DNA of 63,715 nt, the filler included, from Dugesia japonica (Eukaryota), in NCBI GenBank assembly GCA_001938525.1. It is 5 parts of 5 records of this genome, joined end to end, with 100 filler letters (N's around TTAATTAATTAA, not from the genome) between each part and the next. Parts side by side here need not be neighbours in the genome. Positions count along the whole stretch, not along the records: positions 34,491 to 43,261 come from MQRL01638707.1; 4 more parts are not named here. One strand, 5' to 3'. The first letter of the stretch is position 1; every line of letters starts with the position of its first letter. Made by a program: the position numbers and the translations under genes. The notes beneath the pieces are model-generated. The model saw only the letters and a program-made list of their open reading frames with translations. It did no database searches and was not told the origin of the DNA. Shown one piece after another: positions 33,811 through 44,925 of the stretch.

Positions 33811-35621
33811 AAATTAGTTAATCTCATATGATAAAATAAAAATCATTCATCATTACATCACTACATTAAAGATTAGTTAACCTTAATTAATAAAATGTTA
33901 ATAAATTTTATGTTTTAGAAAAAACTTTAATGTTGATTGAAAATTTCATCAAAGAAGTTGATAAAAGTTAATTAGTAGCAATTATTGCTTATTTTTAGTA
34001 TATTCAGCCAGTTTTCAATGATTTTAGTTGAAAAAGTTTCTCAATAAGATCAAATTGGATCAATTTTCAGTCAATTTTGGCCTATTTGTTAAAGAATTGT
34101 CTAATATTGATCTATTTGCTAAGGAATTTCATTAGTCAAATTTAAATTTTCAACAATTAATTAGTGGCTCCCATTAAATTTTAACATTTATAGTTATAAG
34201 ATGATAAATTAATTATAAATTAATTAATAGACGATAAATTATTCTCATCCATTGAATTTCAATAATAGTTTGCTTTTCTTTCCATCTCATTACATTACCT
34301 CATCCGGTTAGTACAATCGAGCAATTATTCCGACTGTTCACATCTAGTCTCAAATTGTTAACGCTCAAGACCGTTAGCTTCCAATCGAGTNNNNNNNNNN
34401 NNNNNNNNNNNNNNNNNNNNNNNNNNNNNNNNNNTTAATTAATTAANNNNNNNNNNNNNNNNNNNNNNNNNNNNNNNNNNNNNNNNNNNNTTCAATTCTA
34501 AGACGATTAATACCAAATTCGAAATTACACGATAAAAATTGACCGAAAAAATTGGTTTCGAAAAGTTGAATTTTCGACCTTCCCGAGCTAAAATTCAACC
34601 GTTCCATCTCGAATTCGAAAATTTTTTTCACGTATTCGTAACGATCAATCAAAATTCTTTCATACTGGCACTTCAATTACTAGCACGATCGACGGCGGGG
34701 GAGGGGGGTCGATGCCAGTGCGCTCATATCTATCTACTTGTCTAACACCACGATTTATAGGGAAAGGTCCAATTTTTCTGTTTTACACTTCCGATACATT
34801 TCATTGATGATATTTAGAGATTTATTTTGGAGGCCATGCCTTTGAAAAATTCCTTTGGCAAATTCTAATGGAACACTACCGAAATCGTCAGCAATATCAA
34901 TAAAACAGATATGAAGATCTGAATTATTTCTAAGATCAATATTGTCAGTTTTGATTCTTTTCGTGGATTGGATTGGTTCTATAAAGATATCAAATAGAGT
35001 CGAAATGTCATCATTTTCGTATTTTTTTAATTAAATAAGAAAGAGATTAGCTAATTCGACGCTTTTTTGAGCTTCGTTCTTTGATAGTCATGTTTCTTTC
35101 TGCTTTTTTGCAGAGATGTTGGATAAATCGTAAATTGATATTTTTTAATACTGTATTTCTCTCTTTTCTTTTCTTGATTTTGGAGTTTCGTTTTCAGTTA
35201 TTAATATTTCAATATTATCGGATGTTGATGGTATTTGCCTTTGAATTGTTTCAGGAATAATTAATTTGGCTATTTTAGCGATGGCCTCTGGCTCATTTTC
35301 TGATAGTTTTTCATCACTTCTTTTATAGATATTATAGATATTATTTTACTTCCAAATCATTATAGAAGTACACACAAGGATTATAAGCAGTCATTACAAT
35401 ATCGTTTAGATGACAGAAGATAACTTGTTTTGATTTTCAATATGGATCCAAGCATATCTCTTCTCAGGATTTGCTCTGATGATTATGTCAAACTTCCAGT
35501 TGTTATCTGTTACGTATTTAGACAGAAATTCTCTCTTTTTCATTTCATATTTAGCTTGATTTGCTTCATTTTTCCTTAGTTTTTCATTTAGTTTTTCTGC
35601 AATTTGTCGATCTTTTTCAAT

Positions 35622-35750
35622 TTGCAATATGAACTAAAATTTTTGTAGAAATAAAATTTAGTAGAATTACCCTATTAATCTTGATTTGATAATTTTTATT
35701 GTTAGTTTAGGTCTTTTTATGCTCTAATTATGCCTGTTAAATAAATCGTT
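35622..35750. repeat. 129-bp direct repeat, copy 1 (copy 2 at 37666-37794)
   Basis: Ungapped alignment with 10 mismatches; brackets the REL retrotransposon exactly. Confidence 0.9.
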
Positions 35751-37665
35751 TACAAAAAATTTAAGCTTTATTTATCAATAAAACAGGATGACTAGGCCGT
35801 GCATTAAGTCCAAGTAGGTATAAACGAATCAATAACCTTAACATTTTTCTTTTAGCAATTTAACTTTTTCTAACAGCCAAGTTCTAACAAACTTAGCTCA
35901 AACATCATGGAAGAAGAGTACAATCAATTGTATTGTATCCGGCTTAGTTGATCATATGATCCAAAAAATACGATTACTGGTTTTGATGACTTTTTCTATA
36001 AGACCCTGTGCGATGTGCTTAATTTCTCTGTTTTTGAGTCCAATTGCTTTGAGAGCTCTTTGATTGGCTGGATCCCATGATCCCAGGGTATCAAGAATTA
36101 TTGCATCGAGTGTAACCTTCTTGTGTTACTTGGCCCCAAGATCCTTTCAAACTTGCTCATATATAATTTTGTTGTCTATTCTAACTTTCTTGAAGCCTTC
36201 AATAGAATCATAGGGTACTTTGACGTCCAAAATGTGAACCTTGTTGTTCCTATTGCTAGTAATAATCAGATCCGGCTTCAACTTGGTTTTAAGGCCTTAG
36301 AGTGAGCAATCATACTGTACGTTAAAGTCCCATTTCCTGAATATTGAGGCCGTCTTCTCCAAAATTCTGTTGTGTTTGTTGTATTTCTGATTTTCATGGC
36401 TGGACAGTGATTAAAGATGTGCGTCTGTGTTTCAGCATGAGTACCACACTGCCTGCAATGAGTAGGCATATTCATTTTGAGCGTGAAAGGGTTGTAGTTG
36501 GTTCTGAGAAGGTTATTTTTTGCTCAGACCATGAATAAAAACCCTCTCTGAGACATTGATTTTTTCATGAATTTACTACTATAGTCAGAAGCAGCCATTT
36601 TATTTGCGATGAGACCTTATGATCAGCATAAGCAAGGATGGTTGCATTGAAACCAGAGTTTATAAAAGGGAATTTTGTTGCAGTATTCTTGATTATGAAA
36701 TCAAAAGTAAGGCTGAATAGAGTCATTGACATAGAACATCCTTACTTTACACTTTTATGAATTGCGATATTGTCAGTGTTGATGTCGAGACAGCTGTAGC
36801 TAGTATATACATCAGTATATAGATCTCTGAGAAGATGAATAGTATCACAGTGGAGACCCATTTTCTTCAGAGTATTCCATAGTAATTCAAGAGGAAGACT
36901 TCCAAAAGCATCAGCAAGATCTAATCAAGTCAAATGAAGATTTGTCTTTTCTCTTTCTGCTTTTTCCTTGATTATTTGGATAGTAGCGTTGTGTTGTGAG
37001 CAGCCATNNNNNNNNNNNNNNNNNNNNNNNNNNNNNNNNNNNNNNNNNNNNNNNNNNNNNNNNNNNNNNNNNNNNNNNNNNNNNNNNNNNNNNNNNNNNN
37101 NNNNNNNNNNNNNNNNNNNNNNNNNNNNNNNNNNNGAATCGTCTTCCTTTCCAGGTTTGAGTATAGGAGAAGTGTAGAATCTTTTCCATTGGTTTAAGAA
37201 TTTTTTTGTTTAAGAACTTTGTTAAAGAGTTCTTTAAGGAAACAATAACTATCGTCTAGTTTGGCCAAGTCTGAGTAGCTGATCTTGTCAAGACCAGAAG
37301 AAGATTTGTTAGCACAGCTAAAAGCATATTCAATTTCTTGAATAGTGATTTCGTTGTTGGTGTGGAAATCTTTAGAAGCAGGCAGTATATGATTTTTAAG
37401 CAGATTAAAGTCGAGATCTTTTGGTATAATCTGAGTAAATTCTTTGATGATGTATTCTTTAGTAGGTTAGTCGTTACAAGACCCTTTGCCGCGAATATAG
37501 ATTAGAAGCAGAAGCTTCGCACTCCCAAGAGCGCCTCTGGAAGCACCTGCTCGAATCGCTCGCCGACGTTATCCGGTGGAGCTGCGTAAGCACATACTTT
37601 TGGCGCCACTCATGATTGATAAATCAACGCAGACCCCTCGTTCTTGACACGGTGGCGGCCTTCTG
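35751..37665 (-). mobile_element. R2/NeSL-type non-LTR retrotransposon with restriction-like endonuclease, internally deleted
   Basis: RT remnants SSGLDKI, LDLADAFGS, LAYADH; CRQCG..ETQTHIFNHC knuckle; KPDLII..ILDVKVPY; LGSW; 3' AATAAA; GC-rich 5' leader. Confidence 0.88.
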
Positions 37666-38449
37666 TTGCAACACGAACTAAAACTTTTGTAGAAATAAAA
37701 TTTAATAGAATTACCCTCTTAATCTGGATTTGATCATTTTTATTATTAGTTTTGGTCTTTTTATGCTCTAATTATGCATGTTAAATAAATCGTTCATTTC
37801 TGTTTAGTGTAAAAAATAAAGCTTCCAAATAGTCCACGCTGCAGTCAGAAAATTATTCAAAAATTTTTATTGGAACAACATTTTCCAAAAGATGCGAACG
37901 GTAGCTATTGCGCCTAAAAAAGCGTAATCGCCTCATAAAAAGTGTAGATAGTAAACAAAAGGCAAGATGAGCTAGCAAACCGGGTGAAACAGAACCTCAC
38001 CCATAAAATCGATTTCCAAAAAAGATATATCGCGGACCTGTTCACCCCCTTAGAGCTCAAAAATCGGGTCCGGTGGAACAATCATGATGACGAGGCCACA
38101 TTCAACTTTTCGTATGACGAGCCAGCTCAGTGGCTTGACCCTGAGGCTCTAAACTTTATGTAGATAAAAAATGTTCGTAAAAAAAATTTATCTTACCAAT
38201 TCATTGTTAAACTTTTGAGTCAGTTAAATTTAATTGGGGAAATCTTGAACCCGAATCAAAGGTGTACAAGTTTGAACTCCAAGTAAGTGTTGGGAGTCAA
38301 TCATTTTGCACTGAAAACCTAAAATGAGCCTTTAGGTAAATTCTTCAAAGGGTCCCCCGAGGGCTGACTTTCCCCTCAGCCATAAATTTCTACACTTAAC
38401 TCAGGTGGAACCCCAACACTACTATAGGTGAACCTTTGGTGATGTAAGT

Positions 38450-39520
38450 TCATTATTTTCAATTTAGTAATAGCTTTGAACTAACCTTCCTTCATAAATG
38501 TAAGTGAATATTGTTTTTTGTCTAATCCCAATTTTCTTGTCAATTTTCAAATGCAACCTTTTTGGCATCATTTTGTAGCGTGAATTCAAAATATTTATCT
38601 GCTTTTTTAGACAATTCTTAAATATTTTATTACAATTTTCTGTCAAATATTTACTTAATTGTTTTAGTTCTGATATGTAAATATCATCTTCAAACGGAAT
38701 AGTATGATAATAAACTTTTGTGTAAGCTACTTTAATGTTTTACTTTTTGTATCATGGCATCATTTGCAAAGTTTGTGTAGATAGTACCGAACTTTTTTGT
38801 TAATTTGTTAGACTTAAATCCTAATCTAAATGAGTGTACAATAAGTTCATCTTCAAGTATAACAACATATAGAAAATCACAATAAAATATTATGATATTC
38901 TTTTCAAATATTTCAATATTTTCATTTTGATCAACACTAATCATTTTTTTCTTGTTATTTTATTTCGTGTTACTTTTTGTTATTTGAAACACTTCATCAT
39001 ACCAATTACTATTGAACTTTTTGATAAATGGTGAAGCTGGCATGTTCGAGATTCTCACATGATCACAAACTTTATATTTTGGTATTTATTTGCTTTTGAT
39101 TGTTTTCCTGATAACTATAACTTTAATTGATTGTTTGAACTTAAATCAACCGGTCTTGTTCCATTTAATTTCTTATGACCAGAATGATTATAACTTTTAA
39201 TAAGTTTCGGTTAAACATTTAACTAACTTTTATTACTCTTATTATTATTATTCAAAGCATCTCTCAATGTACGATTAAATCTCACTACTGTAAGAATACA
39301 CTATAATGGTTAATATTTAGATGACAGCTCTTACAAATCTACTAAATAAATATCACAGTCACATGAAGATCGTCAACAACAATAACATCACCTGGTCCCA
39401 ATCTTTTGCTCCAATATTTTTTGCACCAAAACCACTCTTAATTTTCAATTTATTATTACAAAATTTAGACTTAGTCACTGCATTCTCTTCATCTGCACTT
39501 CTATGTCAGTATATGTATAT
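38450..39520 (-). pseudogene. Fragments (ATPase, integrase C-terminus, probable penton) of another copy of the Polinton 2 family
   Basis: Nucleotide match CCATTATAGTGTATTCT..GAGATTTAATCGTACATTGAGAGATGC with 28211-28280; GDVIVVDDL; DHVRIS..F.K..NW.DEVFQI. Confidence 0.75.
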
Positions 39521-40827
39521 TTAGCAGAGTTATATTTAGATTTATTAATAAAATTATTATTATCTAAGCATTTTAAGAGTTCATTTATATATAAGTTTAG
39601 ACGATAATTAGAATTATCTTAAATTTTATTGAAGTTATTAATTTTAGGATTTTTAAAATTTCTGGAAGCAGATTTATCAGAAAAGGATTCCGCATTAGTA
39701 AATTTATTACTGTTAACGTCAGATCCAGTAGATTTGTTATATTCAACATATCCAATTTTTTATTGTTTAAAAATTTTTTAAACAAGACATTTTAAAATTT
39801 ATATTTGAACTTAAAGTTAATATTATTATTACTAATATTATTATTATAAAAATAAAACCTACTAGCCCAATTGCGACAAGTATTTTTATAGAAGCACTTG
39901 TGCTAGTAGAACATATTTTAAAATTATTATTGTCGTCAGTTTTAGTGATAATTTTATAATTTTTTGCTGGGAACAGCATTATAGGAATTAGTATTATTGG
40001 AAAAGTTACTGGAATTTGTCGCCATAATTTTGTTAATAAATTAAACTTGCTTATTGAATTTATTAACTTTAGTAATTAAGTTATTCTTTTATTTACTCAT
40101 GGTTAAACGAAATGTTGATAGAATTATAAGCTTAGCAATTTAATCCAATGTTTTTCTTTATTTGACCATGATTAAATGAATTTTTCTTGAGACTATGATA
40201 ATAGTGTTTCAGTTATATTTTATTTGTTATTACTAAATAAGTTTTTATTCATTTTAATATAGGTAAATATATAGGTGTAAGTATAGGTAAATTTCAAACT
40301 ACTTTTTGGAATTACCGAAAAAATCTAATAAGAAATAATTGAATCAAATACATTTCGTCATCTTTCTTTTATCTTATAAATATTATGACAGCCGTCAATA
40401 ATGAAAATTCGATAATGAATAAAATCTTTTACCATTGGTTACTTAAATTTCAATTGGTTTAAATATATAATGACTTGACAGTGCGGATAAAAATCAATCA
40501 ATAGGCTTTACTCAAAGAAGAACAGAATACTTTAACAGTTTTGGAATAGAATCAACTGTTTGATATTTACGAATTAAAATTTAAATTGAAGTGAACCGTC
40601 CCCGAAAAATTTATCTATTGACCACAGGTTAAGAAACCCTGCTCTAAAGTATTAATCAATGAAAATAACAAATTGAGAAAAGAAAAAGAATTGAAAACAG
40701 ATTCAAGAAAAAGTTAAATAAAACCTCGAACCCCAATATATATATTCATATATATTCAAAAACATATTGAATAAATTGCTTCGAACTATATAAAATGACA
40801 AACCGCAATTTTTTAAAACATTCGTTT

Positions 40828-40869
40828 GTAATGCATGTTTCGGACAAATCTATGTCCATCATCAGTTAC
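40828..40869 (-). ncRNA. Minimal type I hammerhead ribozyme, core variant (U16.1 to C)
   Basis: GTAA-CTGATGA-T-GGACATAGATTTGTCC-GAAA-CATG-CA-TTAC. Confidence 0.75.
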
Positions 40870-41522
40870 TGCGGTAAAATAAGAAGGAAATTGTTTATAT
40901 ACTGGCCAATAAAACCTGTTACGTAATCAATCCAATAAAATAAGATTAAAATAAATTTAAAATTGAATGTGTCCATTTGAGTATTAGGAATCGGATTATG
41001 CAACCCAATTCTTAAAGCCTCACACGCAATTCTTTCAAAATAGTTACCAAAACCGTTTTTCCAAACTGTAAACTCATCAATTCTTATTTTGCTTTTTCTA
41101 TTTATGCAGCAACAGGCATGATCTAAACCTGAACTTTTCCTATTCAATTGCAAATGCTCGCTAACACGTGTACGATAATGACGATATAACTCTCCAATAT
41201 ACGTGGCATCACACCCGTTACAATTGAATTGATAATCTAGGTTAGCGAGCAAAGCTTTTGGTGTAGTAGATTTGTTGCTTAAATAACTTGAGGTTTTCTT
41301 TGAAGTGAAAATTAATCTAAATTTATTATCATCAAAATATTTCATGCGAGAGCATTTTAATGATTTAGATCCTTCCCAGAATTGGGTTTGATAATCCGAT
41401 TCCTAATACTCAAATGGACACACATTCACTTTTAAATTTATTTTAATCTTATCTTATTGGATTGATTACGTAACAGGTTTTATTGGCCAGTATATAAACA
41501 ATTTCCTACTTATTTTACCGCA

Positions 41523-41564
41523 GTAACTGATGACGGAAATATATTTGTCCGAAACATGTATTAC
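41523..41564 (+). ncRNA. Minimal type I hammerhead ribozyme
   Basis: GTAA-CTGATGA-C-GGAAATATATTTGTCC-GAAA-CATG-TA-TTAC: stem I GTAA/TTAC, palindromic stem III, GUA cleavage triplet. Confidence 0.85.
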
Positions 41565-41619
41565 AAACAAATGTTTTAAAAAATTGCGGTTTTTCTTTAT
41601 ATATATATATATATATATA

Positions 41620-43190
41620 CAGTGAAACCTCCAAAGTTGGAAACTCGATAAGTTGACAACCCCTTCAATTTGAAACACACGCGGTCGCACAAGTGAAAAT
41701 AAACAATATATGACCACTATAAATTGAAAACCTCTCTCTTTTAAGTTGAAATAATTTACGGTGTCAATTCATACAAGAACTTGTAGAGCAAAAATTAACT
41801 TGAATTTTTTAAATTTGTTTCAAAATTCAAGGTCAAATAAAATTATTTCATCAATTTATAAAAGTTAGTAAATTGTTTTATTGTTCCAATTTCCAAGGAC
41901 GCTGAATAGGTAATTTTGATTAATAAATTTGGCAATAATTACAATTTGAATTTTAAAGGTTGTTGAACTTTAAAAATTAATAATATTAACACCAAATAAG
42001 GTTGTTGAATTTTAAAGGTTGATAATATTGACACAAAATAGGCAATTTTAATTATTAGATTTATTAATGTTTACAATTTGAATTAAAAAGGCCAAAATAG
42101 TTTTACTATAAATATTAGACAAGAATATCAGACAAATACCCATAAAACACTGGTAAAATTTTTTTTGAGGCATTGCATAAGCTATTTTATTTGTACTTAT
42201 AATATTTTATTGCAATTTATTGAATTATCATTATTATAGTTAGAATTTTAAATTATATTTTTATAAACTGTTTATTTTAATCTAGCAGTTTTCAATTTTA
42301 CTTTAGATTGTTAAAATTGTTGTAGATTGTATTTTTACAATTAATTCTAGCGGTTTACAATTTTTATAAATTATTAAAAGGTTGTAGACTAGCACCGAGT
42401 ATTCTTCTTCACATCTCCTATCACTTTTGCTATGTACACATACACCGAAAAACAATGGAAGTCACTAGTTGAACTAACAATCGATCAAAAGAAGATTGTT
42501 TTGGATTTCCTTGACAAAGGGCACAAAGGAGCAGACCTTGCAAAACAGTTTGCAGTGATAAGATTAATTCTTTATGGCAAAACAATTTTGACTCATGTAG
42601 AAAATAAAACTTCGAGCCAATGATAAAAATGAATTAAACAAGAAAGTTTTTAATTTCTTTACAATGTGTTCCAAGAAGAACATTCCAATTTCTTGTCCCA
42701 AGAGAAGGATTCAAAGATTGCCGTTAGTAGGTATCACCGATTTCAAGGGTAGCAATAGTTCGCTCGAGAAGTTTTGTAAGAGGAACAGCATTGACTTTCG
42801 AGCAATATGTGGTGATGCTGGAGATTTGGACATGAGTGCTGTAGAGTCCTACAAAAAGAGAATCCCCTTAATTATTTATAAATTTGATCGAAAAACGTTT
42901 TCAATACCGATGAAATGTCTGTATCCTTTCGTGCAACTACTAATAGACACTTTATATAACCAGTTAAAGACAGAAAAGATACAAAACAGTCCAAAGATGG
43001 AATTTCTATTCTGCTAGCGTCAAGTATGACAGGTAATATTAACATAAGTAAAATTAAATATAATTTATTAATCGACTTTTCTTTTGGTAGGAGAAAAACT
43101 CAAGCCCCATCATCATTGGCTATGCAGCATATCTACATCCATTCAAATCTGCTCGTATAGATGTTGAGAAACTTTCGGTCATTTGGCGTT
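41620..43190 (+). mobile_element. pogo/Tigger DNA transposon, left end and degenerate transposase with intron
   Basis: (TA)n then CAGT terminus; HTH-psq LTIDQKK..LAKQF; CENP-B-type FKGSN..LEKFCKR; FNTDE; intron 43033-43090 restores MTG/EKLKPIIIG. Confidence 0.85.
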
Positions 43191-44925
43191 GTTAAGTAAT
43201 AATAAGAGAGAGAGATAAGTAATGATATCAAAAATGTGTATTTCACAACAATGCTATGTGTNNNNNNNNNNNNNNNNNNNNNNNNNNNNNNNNNNNNNNN
43301 NNNNNTTAATTAATTAANNNNNNNNNNNNNNNNNNNNNNNNNNNNNNNNNNNNNNNNNNNNACAATAAATCAAAACCTCAAATTCATCTTCTAAAATTGA
43401 CTTGATACTTTCAAAATGACAATTACACTCACGCCATGAAAATTAAGTATAAGGATTCAACCACCACTATTTTATTCTGGTCATCGTGTAACACCTGATA
43501 CATTTATTTCAATTTCAGTCATCGATATTTTGTCTATATTCATCACCTCTTTACTATAGCAATCCATCTCATCCACGCTNNNNNNNNNNNNNNNNNNNNN
43601 NNNNNNNATGTCTTTATAATCGTTAACATCATATTCATTATCATCTCTCTTTAGTACCATCTCTCTAAGACTCGTCGTCAAATCTCTTTATTAACACCTC
43701 TCTCATCATCATCATCACATCTCACTAAATTCATTAAAAATCAGACCTTCATCTACATATAAATTTCCTGTCATAATTCCTTCTTGTTCATTATAAATAA
43801 TAATATTTTTCTNNNNNNNNNNNNNNNNNNNNNNNNNNNNNNNNNNNNNNNNNNNNNNNNNNNNNNNNNNNNNNNNNNNNNNNNNNNNNNNNNNNNNNNN
43901 NNNNNNNNNNNNNNNNNNNNNNNNNNNNNNNNNNNNNNNNNNNNNNNNNNNNNNNNNNNNNNNNNNNNNNNNNNNNNNNNNNNNNNNNNNNNNNNNNNNN
44001 NNNNNNNNNNNNNNNNNNNNNNNNNNNNNNNNNNNNNNNNNNNNNNNNNNNNNNNNNNNNNNNNNNNNAATTATAATAATAATACAATTCTTGTGCTTAA
44101 ACCTGACTCATAATCTAATATTTTATTATTTATAATGATCATTATGATTTATTCTGTTTTTCTCCTATAATTTCTCTCTAAAATATCAACATATTTTAAT
44201 ATAATTATTTGTTTTAATCTTTCTTTTTCTCTCATCGATATAATTTTATTTTTAACACATGGTTAACTTCATCACATTTATACAAATTATAAATAATAAT
44301 AGATATTCCTTGTTCTATTGACATTCTTCTTTTCGATCACTTTGACTGATTTTCTGAACACATTTTACCTTAACCATCTAATTATTGATTATCTTCAATT
44401 CTTGTATTTTTTAATATGTTATCAATTCTTCGTTTACTCTACAGCTTTTTACAACTTTATTTTCTTTTTATTGTTTTACCCTAGATTTTGTTTGATATTT
44501 CTTACACTTTTTAACTTCAGTTATTATTATTTAATAATCGTGTCTTTATTTTTTCATAGATCAATATTTCTTTTATTTCTCATTATTTATTTATTTATTT
44601 AGTTTTTTATTTCATTTTCTTATTACTCTTTAATTTATTTCCTTCTATAATTTTCATATTTTACAAAATGCTGTTTCAGCCAAACAAATTACTGAGGGCC
44701 CACAAAATTCCGCCCCGGAATTTATCCTGGTTCCGTTACTCTCTTTACACACGTTTGTTTCCATTTGGTTACTGCCGTTTACAATTCGTTGTTTGTGGTG
44801 GTGTTTGAAAAGATCCCACAAGGCAAGATACTCATTAGTCATAACAGAAAGAAAAAACAAAAGAAATAAGCAATTAATAAAAATACTTTTATTCTACATA
44901 TATGTTGGCATTATTTAATAGTTAA

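What the first reader, a model, noticed from the sequence alone, without database searches (positions are those of the whole stretch)
35622..37794. REL (R2/NeSL-type) retrotransposon flanked by a ~129-bp apparent target-site duplication
Seen: 35622-35750 and 37666-37794 align without gaps at 10 mismatches. They abut the element's 3' end (just after AATAAA) and its GC-rich 5' leader. Established: non-LTR TSDs are usually under ~20 bp; the notable exception is rotifer R9, an R2-clade element making 126-bp TSDs in 28S rDNA. Inference: this is a second case of near-nucleosome-length staggered cleavage, here in an AT-rich non-rDNA target. The left boundary could be anywhere from 120 to 129 bp.
Basis: partly seen in the sequence, partly recalled or inferred. 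Interest (0 to 1): 0.78.

Follow-up and report, generated by a model that had tools for sequence, protein, structure and literature searches.

The report
Decayed R2-like retrotransposon, 129-bp flanking repeat
A dead, shortened copy of an R2-type jumping gene lies between two 92%-identical 129-base repeats that may be an unusually long insertion scar, but with only this one copy available the repeat could equally belong to the element itself or to a shared target.

Summary
35622-35750 and 37666-37794 are an ungapped 129-nt direct repeat with 10 mismatches (blastn E 2e-42). It has sharp edges on both sides and no third copy in the piece. The sequence between the copies, on the minus strand, is a decayed non-LTR retrotransposon with a C-terminal zinc knuckle and restriction-like endonuclease. 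A profile of its only database relatives finds solved R2 proteins as the two top hits (E 3.5e-6 and 4.6e-6).

The interpretation as a 129-bp target-site duplication is plausible but untested:
- No other copy and no empty site could be reached.
- The two repeat copies lie on opposite sides of the assembly gap, so "one element flanked by both" rests on the scaffold join.
- The left flank is a second R2-like reverse-transcriptase fragment on the same strand. Its open frame starts within 6 nt of the repeat's outer edge.
- The element is more decayed than the repeat's divergence predicts (10 in-frame stops against about 2 expected).

Rivals remain open: the 129-mer is the element's own 3' end, a shared 5' part, or a later DNA-level duplication. 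"Second case" is also wrong, because Dualen LINEs and nicking-deficient R2 already give long duplications. Verdict: partly supported, moderate interest.

The parts
35622..35750 (.). Left copy of the 129-nt direct repeat. It abuts the 3' end of element A and the 5' edge of fragment B.
   Evidence: 129 nt, 10 mismatches to the other copy, E 2e-42; 22% G+C; stops in all frames.
37666..37794 (.). Right copy of the 129-nt direct repeat. It abuts the G+C-rich 5' leader of element A.
   Evidence: edges sharp.
35751..37665 (-). Element A: a decayed, shortened R2-like (RLE-type) non-LTR retrotransposon. It is treated as one broken element and includes the assembly gap 37008-37135.
   Evidence: Relatives' C-terminal module aligns by tblastn at E 1e-22 to 1e-35. 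Stop-free pieces are 57-63% identical to P0002. zf-RVT E 2.7e-5. The coding path has 10 in-frame stops, at least 2 frameshifts, one large internal deletion and no N-terminal DNA-binding region.
35982..36634 (-). Within A: pre-knuckle linker, CCHC zinc knuckle and PD-(D/E)xK restriction-like endonuclease module (outer bounds of the match to relatives).
   Evidence: A profile of the relatives hits R2 proteins 9nl3_A (3.5e-6) and 9dou_A (4.6e-6) over their zinc knuckle and endonuclease.
36574..37466 (-). Within A: reverse-transcriptase remnant, from the N-terminal motifs to motif C, interrupted by the gap.
   Evidence: RT motifs seen by eye. 33% aa identity to B's motif-A region, E 6e-7. Pfam RVT_1 did not reach E 1 on A's short pieces.
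37008..37135 (.). Assembly gap (N, length only estimated) inside the RT of element A. It separates the two repeat copies onto different contigs.
   Evidence: Both sides carry same-strand RT parts in the right order. Frame continuity cannot be determined.
37490..37665 (-). G+C-rich 5' leader of A, of unknown origin, with no open frame.
   Evidence: 46-60% G+C. No Rfam family. Folds no better than shuffles, z -0.35. No HDV-like fold under a crude descriptor of my own.
35751..35960 (-). 3' untranslated tail of A under the duplication reading (about 200 nt). AATAAA lies 16 nt before the junction and there is no poly(A).
   Evidence: the match to relatives ends at 35982.
34764..35621 (-). Fragment B: a second, older-looking R2-like RT fragment (region before the RT up to motif A), on the same strand as A. 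It lacks everything after motif A. Its 73-codon open stretch begins within 6 nt of the repeat's outer edge.
   Evidence: Only PDB hit is R2 protein 9nl2_A, RT motif A region, E 0.02. Pfam RVT_1 E 0.054. A-B match E 6e-7. ORF 35406-35627. 7 in-frame stops and no frameshift needed.

Best explanation
Element A is a dead, 5'-shortened and internally deleted copy of an R2-like non-LTR retrotransposon (reverse transcriptase, CCHC knuckle, restriction-like endonuclease). It integrated by target-primed reverse transcription just upstream of an older R2-like fragment (B). The 129-nt direct repeat is most simply a long target-site duplication. On that reading, the first-strand nick was at the right-flank/129-mer boundary, and the second-strand break was 129 bp downstream at the 129-mer/B boundary. 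Fill-in then copied the 129-mer onto both sides. What is shown: the repeat, its sharp edges, the type of element and the identity of B. What is inferred: that the repeat arose at integration. Also inferred is the cause of the stagger. It could be a fixed property of the family, as in R9. It could be a one-off repair product, as seen when R2 second-strand nicking fails, which is plausible for a defective copy moved by another element's protein.
For: The repeat is real and exactly bounded. Its inner edges coincide with a jump to 46-60% G+C at A's 5' end, and with a point 16 nt past an AATAAA and about 200 nt past the end of the endonuclease match at A's 3' end. A is RLE-type. Long duplications are documented for this group: R9 at 126 bp (PMC6895275, PMC13486585), Dualen at median 900 bp (PMC9977147), and large duplications when R2 second-strand nicking is compromised (PMC13486585). 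The repeat is non-coding and shows no similarity to the rest of A. The other candidate 3' end (35622) has no AATAAA within 30 nt (read). If B once inserted at the same site with the same geometry, its 5' end abutting the repeat is expected.
Against: There is one copy only, and no empty site or second family copy was available. The two repeat copies are on different contigs of the scaffold (gap 37008-37135). A's ends are defined only by the repeat edges, so the 'exact flanking' is partly circular. A carries 10 in-frame stops where about 2 (0.9-3.5) are expected from the repeat's divergence (P about 1e-4 at the point estimate, 0.003 at the upper bound). So A was either already dead when it arrived, or the repeat is younger than A. 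There is no poly(A) or simple-repeat tail at the 3' junction. The outer edge of the left copy coincides with the start of B's open frame, which a random target would not predict.
Confidence: 0.45

Rival explanations
1. The 129-mer is the last 129 nt of the element's own 3' untranslated region. The copy upstream of A is then a partial tandem copy. It would be made either by the reverse transcriptase jumping from the 5' end of A's RNA to the 3' end of a second element RNA, or by a separate, severely 5'-truncated insertion at the same site. The true insertion would span 35622-37794 with little or no duplication.
For: End-to-end template jumping by RLE and APE LINE reverse transcriptases is established (PMC6895275, section 'A new model'). 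Tandem insertions of RLE elements are reported (Utopia-1_NVit, PMC4640811). A 3' UTR of about 330 nt is ordinary for such elements. If the composite is removed in thought, the three bases left of 37795 on the minus strand read ATG, in frame with B's 73-codon open stretch (read). No poly(A) marks 35751 as an RNA end.
Against: AATAAA sits 16 nt before 35751 but not near 35622. The G+C-rich leader between the upstream 129-mer and A's RT needs a further event. No short duplication is visible around 35622/37794. The ATG coincidence has a chance of about 2% and was noticed after the fact.
Confidence: 0.25
2. The 129-mer is a 5' terminal module, either a 5' UTR or co-transcribed upstream target retained on the RNA. 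It would be shared by A and B, which then lie head-to-tail as two insertions into one specific site.
For: On the minus strand both A and B are directly preceded by the 129-mer, about 380 and 470 nt before their RT motif 1. B's open frame starts at the repeat edge. R2 ORFs need no ATG and R2 RNAs can retain upstream target sequence (PMC13580325, PMC6895275). Both fragments are R2-like and on the same strand.
Against: A and B share only 33% aa identity at RT motif A and no DNA similarity next to the repeat, yet the 129-mers are 92% identical. That would need a recent exchange of the module. A's first 176 nt after the repeat are G+C-rich and unlike B's.
Confidence: 0.1
3. The repeat was made or homogenised at the DNA level after A was already dead, by a repair-associated duplication or gene conversion, or it reflects a wrong scaffold join. 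It would then say nothing about how the element cuts its target.
For: A's decay (10 stops in about 450 codons, at least 2 frameshifts, one large deletion) matches B's (7 stops in 286 codons). It far exceeds what the 7.8% repeat divergence predicts. The repeats have no indel. The two copies lie on different contigs.
Against: Both repeat/element junctions lie inside contigs, so they are real. A duplication whose two edges fall exactly on the ends of a retrotransposon remnant is what integration predicts, not random repair. RT parts on the two sides of the gap are in the right order and strand.
Confidence: 0.12

Closest known systems
R9 of bdelloid rotifers (Gladyshev & Arkhipova 2009, Gene 448:145; cited in PMC6895275 and PMC13486585)
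   Same: An R2-derived, restriction-like-endonuclease element whose insertions are flanked by a 126-bp duplication. That length is almost the same as the 129 nt seen here.
   Different: R9 is specific to a 28S rDNA site and the duplication was seen in many copies. Here the flank is AT-rich non-rDNA, only one decayed copy is seen, and the element's zinc-knuckle piece found no R2/R9-type protein above threshold in 1.84 billion proteins. Clade membership was not tested.
R2 (Bombyx mori, avian R2; PDB 9nl3, 9dou, 9nl2)
   Same: The C-terminal CCHC knuckle and PD-(D/E)xK endonuclease align over about 160 residues. B's RT motif A region also hits R2.
   Different: R2 inserts in 28S rDNA with a 2-bp deletion (PMC6895275, PMC13486585) and has N-terminal zinc-finger and Myb domains. 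A has neither the target nor the N-terminal domains.
Dualen-4b_cRei of Chlamydomonas (PMC9977147)
   Same: A LINE with an RLE whose new insertions carry long flanking duplications that resemble target-site duplications.
   Different: The duplications vary in length (median 900 bp) and the element also has an APE endonuclease. No APE is seen here.
R2 protein defective in second-strand nicking (PMC13486585)
   Same: Shows that an R2-type insertion can end with a large target duplication through host repair, without a programmed long stagger.
   Different: This is an engineered protein in human cells. Whether natural defective copies moved in trans behave this way is not known.
Tandem Utopia insertions (PMC4640811)
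   Same: RLE elements found head-to-tail in one target, as A and B are here.
   Different: Utopia targets U2 snRNA genes and makes duplications of 0 or 20 bp.

Membership tests
RLE-bearing non-LTR retrotransposons (R2/NeSL/R4/Hero/CRE group) | C-terminal CCHC zinc knuckle followed by a PD-(D/E)xK restriction-like endonuclease | tested here: met
   A's pieces are 63%, 57% and 37% identical to P0002 over the knuckle, the PD..D.K stretch and the end of the domain. tblastn E 1e-22 to 1e-35. A profile of the relatives gives R2 proteins as the top two PDB hits, E 3.5e-6 and 4.6e-6, aligned over knuckle and endonuclease.
RLE-bearing non-LTR retrotransposons (R2/NeSL/R4/Hero/CRE group) | Reverse-transcriptase domain upstream of the endonuclease on the same strand | tested here: inconclusive
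   RT motifs 1, 2, A, B and C are visible by eye. A's motif-A piece matches B's (E 6e-7), and B hits RVT_1 (0.054) and the R2 RT (0.02). A's own short pieces gave no Pfam or PDB RT hit. The RT end and thumb are deleted.
RLE-bearing non-LTR retrotransposons (R2/NeSL/R4/Hero/CRE group) | N-terminal DNA-binding region (zinc fingers, Myb) in autonomous copies | tested here: not met
   Only about 125 codons lie before RT motif 1. About 58 of them are the G+C-rich leader, which has stops in all frames. This copy is truncated or deleted, so the family's own state is unknown.
R2 clade / R9 | Insertion at a specific 28S rDNA site | tested here: not met
   No rRNA or other Rfam family anywhere in the piece at E up to 1. 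The repeat is 22-24% G+C.
R2 clade / R9 | RT phylogeny places the element inside the clade | not tested
   The RT is in short stop-free pieces and no named reference sequences were obtainable. The tools find no protein by name.
Long-duplication LINEs (R9-like behaviour) | The flanking repeat is single-copy at empty sites and recurs, with different sequence or at the same site, around other copies | not testable with these tools
   The source genome is not in the reachable collections. Window ORFs and relatives are not on record, metagenome scans were empty, and the word search was empty.
NeSL clade | Spliced-leader or other RNA-gene target, and a Ulp1-type protease in some members | tested here: not met
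   No RNA gene at the site. No protease-like match in any piece. The RT-based clade test was not possible.

The most novel reading that the evidence does not exclude
A lineage of restriction-like-endonuclease retrotransposons that is unrelated in sequence to R9 and not tied to rDNA always places its second-strand break about 129 bp downstream of the first nick. Taken with R9's 126 bp, this would point to a conserved spacing rule for the second cut, such as the geometry of a second protein subunit or a chromatin ruler. It could also explain why two R2-like fragments here sit in tandem, each preceded by the 129-mer.
Probability: 0.15. Interest if true: 0.6.

Novelty: new member of a known kind. 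Interest (0 to 1): 0.35.

Why it matters
How non-LTR retrotransposons make and place the second-strand break is still open (PMC6895275, PMC13486585). R9's 126-bp duplication is singled out in the 2026 literature as the case to study. An independent lineage with nearly the same spacing at a non-rDNA site would suggest a shared structural rule rather than an R9 oddity. It would also give a second natural system for comparison. As it stands, the locus is a single decayed copy, and it shows that such a case may exist, not that it does. The practical value now is a caution: a long repeat around one copy, split across a scaffold gap and next to a related fragment, does not suffice to call a target-site duplication.

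Tried and rejected
- The word search with the zinc-knuckle piece found nothing.
- Exact look-ups of two window ORFs and of relatives P0002 and P0003 were not on record.
- The cluster look-up gave UniParc ids only, with no organism.
- The metagenome scan with the relatives' alignment gave 599 pattern matches, none confirmed.
- The metagenome scan with the longest exact block of the repeat gave 0 matches.

2. The G+C-rich leader as a ribozyme or captured RNA: no Rfam hit, fold z -0.35, and no HDV-like double pseudoknot under a lenient descriptor of my own that hits 39% of shuffles. I found no support, but the negative is weak.

3. Extension of the repeat into A's last 20 nt (a shared AAGCTT-containing stretch seen by eye): not significant. 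Rejected.

4. Ciliate-type genetic code to explain the many in-frame TAA stops: rejected, because TGA also occurs on the coding paths and frameshifts remain.

5. A and B as a recent tandem duplication of one unit: rejected. They share only 33% aa identity at motif A and no DNA similarity elsewhere.

6. tRNA, tandem repeat or satellite nature of the 129-mer: none found.

7. PDB and Pfam searches with A's own short RT pieces gave no usable hits.

8. The R9 paper itself is not held, so its facts are taken from papers that cite it.

Full report
**Observation.** The piece 34491-43261 holds one strong direct repeat: 35622-35750 and 37666-37794. It is 129 nt, ungapped and 92% identical.
- A column-by-column check gives 10 mismatches (5 transitions), no indel, p-distance 0.078 and blastn E 2e-42. 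There is no third copy on either strand of the piece.
- The sequence just beyond each of the four edges aligns no better than shuffled sequence, so the repeat is sharply bounded.
- The repeat is 22-24% G+C with stops in all six frames. It matches no RNA family, tRNA or tandem array.

**The gap.** 37008-37135 is N. Upstream of it on the minus strand lie the N-terminal RT motifs. Downstream lie the following RT motifs, on the same strand and in the right order.
- Using neighbour B as a ruler, anchors on the two sides of the gap are offset by 2121 and 2023 nt. A therefore has about 98 nt more than B across the gap, so the real gap may be shorter than the 128 N written.
- One continuous element is the simplest reading. 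Frame continuity cannot be known, and the spacing of 2044 is only an estimate.
- The two repeat copies sit on opposite sides of the gap, that is on different contigs. Each repeat/element junction is inside a contig and so is real. That both junctions belong to one insertion rests on the scaffold join.

**What the insert is.** On the minus strand, 35751-37665 reads as an RT remnant followed by a CCHC knuckle and a PD..D.K stretch.
- Pfam gives zf-RVT (E 2.7e-5) on the knuckle piece.
- A full scan of 1.84 billion proteins with that piece gave five hits at E up to 0.001. Only P0002 and P0003 are credible relatives, with a single matched stretch at 61% and 54% identity; the other three matched in several short stretches, which I read as zinc-finger repeats. 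A word search with P0002 added P0006 and P0007.
- All four are UniParc-only gene models. They fuse the same module to a gag-like region, a kinase or a seryl-tRNA synthetase.
- A's stop-free pieces match P0002 collinearly at 63%, 57% and 37% identity. tblastn of the four relatives places the module at 35982-36634, in two frames, at E 1e-22 to 1e-35.
- A profile of three relatives finds solved R2 proteins as its two best PDB hits (9nl3_A 3.5e-6, 9dou_A 4.6e-6). The alignment runs over about 160 residues of their zinc knuckle and endonuclease.
- So the restriction-like-endonuclease assignment is supported. The clade (R2, NeSL, R4, Hero or other) is not resolved.

**State of the element.** A is about 1.9 kb, against several kb for autonomous elements of this group.
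- On its coding path I count 10 in-frame stops (6 TAA, 4 TGA, no TAG) and at least two frameshifts after the gap.
- There is one large internal deletion between RT motif C and the region before the knuckle. This is inferred from where the match to P0002 begins and from the translation.
- There is no N-terminal DNA-binding region.
- The first 176 nt (37490-37665) are G+C-rich, not coding, not a known RNA, and not unusually structured.

**The flanks.** The left flank is not anonymous DNA. 34764-35621 on the minus strand is a second RT fragment, B.
- Its only PDB hit is an R2 protein at RT motif A (E 0.02). Pfam RVT_1 is weak (0.054). It matches A's motif-A piece at 33% identity (E 6e-7).
- B has 7 in-frame stops and lacks everything after motif A.
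- B's 73-codon open stretch starts within 6 nt of the outer edge of the left repeat copy.
- On the element's strand the order is therefore: right flank, 129-mer, A, 129-mer, B. Both R2-like fragments are directly preceded by the 129-mer, about 380 and 470 nt before RT motif 1.
- The right flank (37795 onward) shows no match to A, to B or to the relatives.

**What the repeat is.** Four readings fit the anatomy.
1. *Target-site duplication of 129 bp.* The inner edges coincide with the composition jump at A's 5' end, and with a point 16 nt after an AATAAA and about 200 nt after the endonuclease at its 3' end. Long duplications are known for this group: R9 at 126 bp (PMC6895275, PMC13486585) and Dualen at median 900 bp (PMC9977147). 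If B had earlier entered the same site with the same geometry, its 5' end would be expected to abut the 129-mer. The recent finding that R2 insertions shift to large duplications when the protein's second-strand nick fails (PMC13486585) means a single long duplication need not reflect a fixed stagger.
2. *The 129-mer is the element's own 3' end.* The upstream copy would then be a partial tandem copy made by template jumping (an established property, PMC6895275) or by a second truncated insertion (tandem RLE elements exist, PMC4640811). Taken that way, an ATG immediately precedes B's open stretch in frame. I noticed this after the fact and give it little weight.
3. *The 129-mer is a 5' module shared by A and B.* This conflicts with 92% identity of the 129-mers against 33% protein identity of the RTs.
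4. *A later DNA-level duplication or homogenisation, or a scaffold error.*

**Age check.** If the repeats were identical at integration, each lineage has diverged by about 4% (Poisson range 1.9-7.1%). Applied to A's about 450 codons, that predicts about 2 new stops (0.9-3.5), against 10 observed. The probability is about 1e-4 at the point estimate and 0.003 at the upper bound. The model is crude: it assumes uniform rates and uses present-day codons. I did not compute a biased-mutation model; by rough reasoning, a G/C-to-A/T bias could raise the expectation about two-fold. Even so, A looks as old as B and older than the repeat. Either A was already defective when copied (it may be a non-autonomous deletion derivative moved in trans), or the repeat is younger than A or has been homogenised. 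This weakens, but does not exclude, the simple duplication story.

**Comparison with the known.** The closest behaviour is R9. The closest protein with a solved structure is R2. The locus fails R2/R9 membership on target (not rDNA), and the RT-clade test could not be run. The nucleosome-length idea has no evidence here.

- One search printed raw six-frame translations. One search printed bounds of stop-free stretches, pulled in by two codons, to serve as tool references. Both come close to showing where breaks lie, so I have not repeated them in the notes or here.

**Verdict.** The element type is confirmed as RLE/R2-like. The 129-bp target-site duplication is the leading reading (0.45) but is unproven. 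Interest is moderate.

Noticed in passing
window 34764-35621 (minus strand): A second, more diverged R2-like reverse-transcriptase fragment (B) lies directly beside the left repeat copy, on the same strand as element A. It has 7 in-frame stops but no frameshift, and it lacks everything after RT motif A. Left of it (about 34690-34735) is a short G+C-rich stretch of unknown nature.
   Followed up: partly
window 40787-41012 and 41378-41605: An inverted repeat of about 226 nt (94-96% complementary) surrounds a 159-aa ORF (40866-41345, minus). By eye the ORF has a GIY-YIG-like stretch of the kind found in Penelope-like elements. Pfam did not confirm it.
   Followed up: no
window 42432-43261 (plus strand): Two ORFs that by eye resemble the helix-turn-helix part of a pogo/Tigger-type transposase, running to the edge of the piece. 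Pfam was silent.
   Followed up: no
proteins P0002, P0003, P0006, P0007: The only database relatives of A's endonuclease module are UniParc-only gene models. They fuse the module to a gag-like knuckle region, a kinase domain or a seryl-tRNA synthetase. They are probably retrotransposon fragments absorbed by gene prediction in an AT-rich genome. The tools give no organism.
   Followed up: partly
window 35751-37665 and 34764-35621, coding paths: All in-frame stop triplets are TAA or TGA and none is TAG (A: 6 TAA and 4 TGA; B: 5 TAA and 2 TGA). This does not fit a TAA/TAG-reassigned code. It might reflect a biased mutation spectrum.
   Followed up: partly
window 37984-38163 (plus strand): A 59-aa ORF in a locally G+C-richer stretch (40-54% G+C) of the right flank. 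It has no Pfam match and its nature is unknown.
   Followed up: no
window 41956-42040 and 41598-41619: A 42-nt unit repeated twice (86% matches) and a (TA)11 microsatellite.
   Followed up: no
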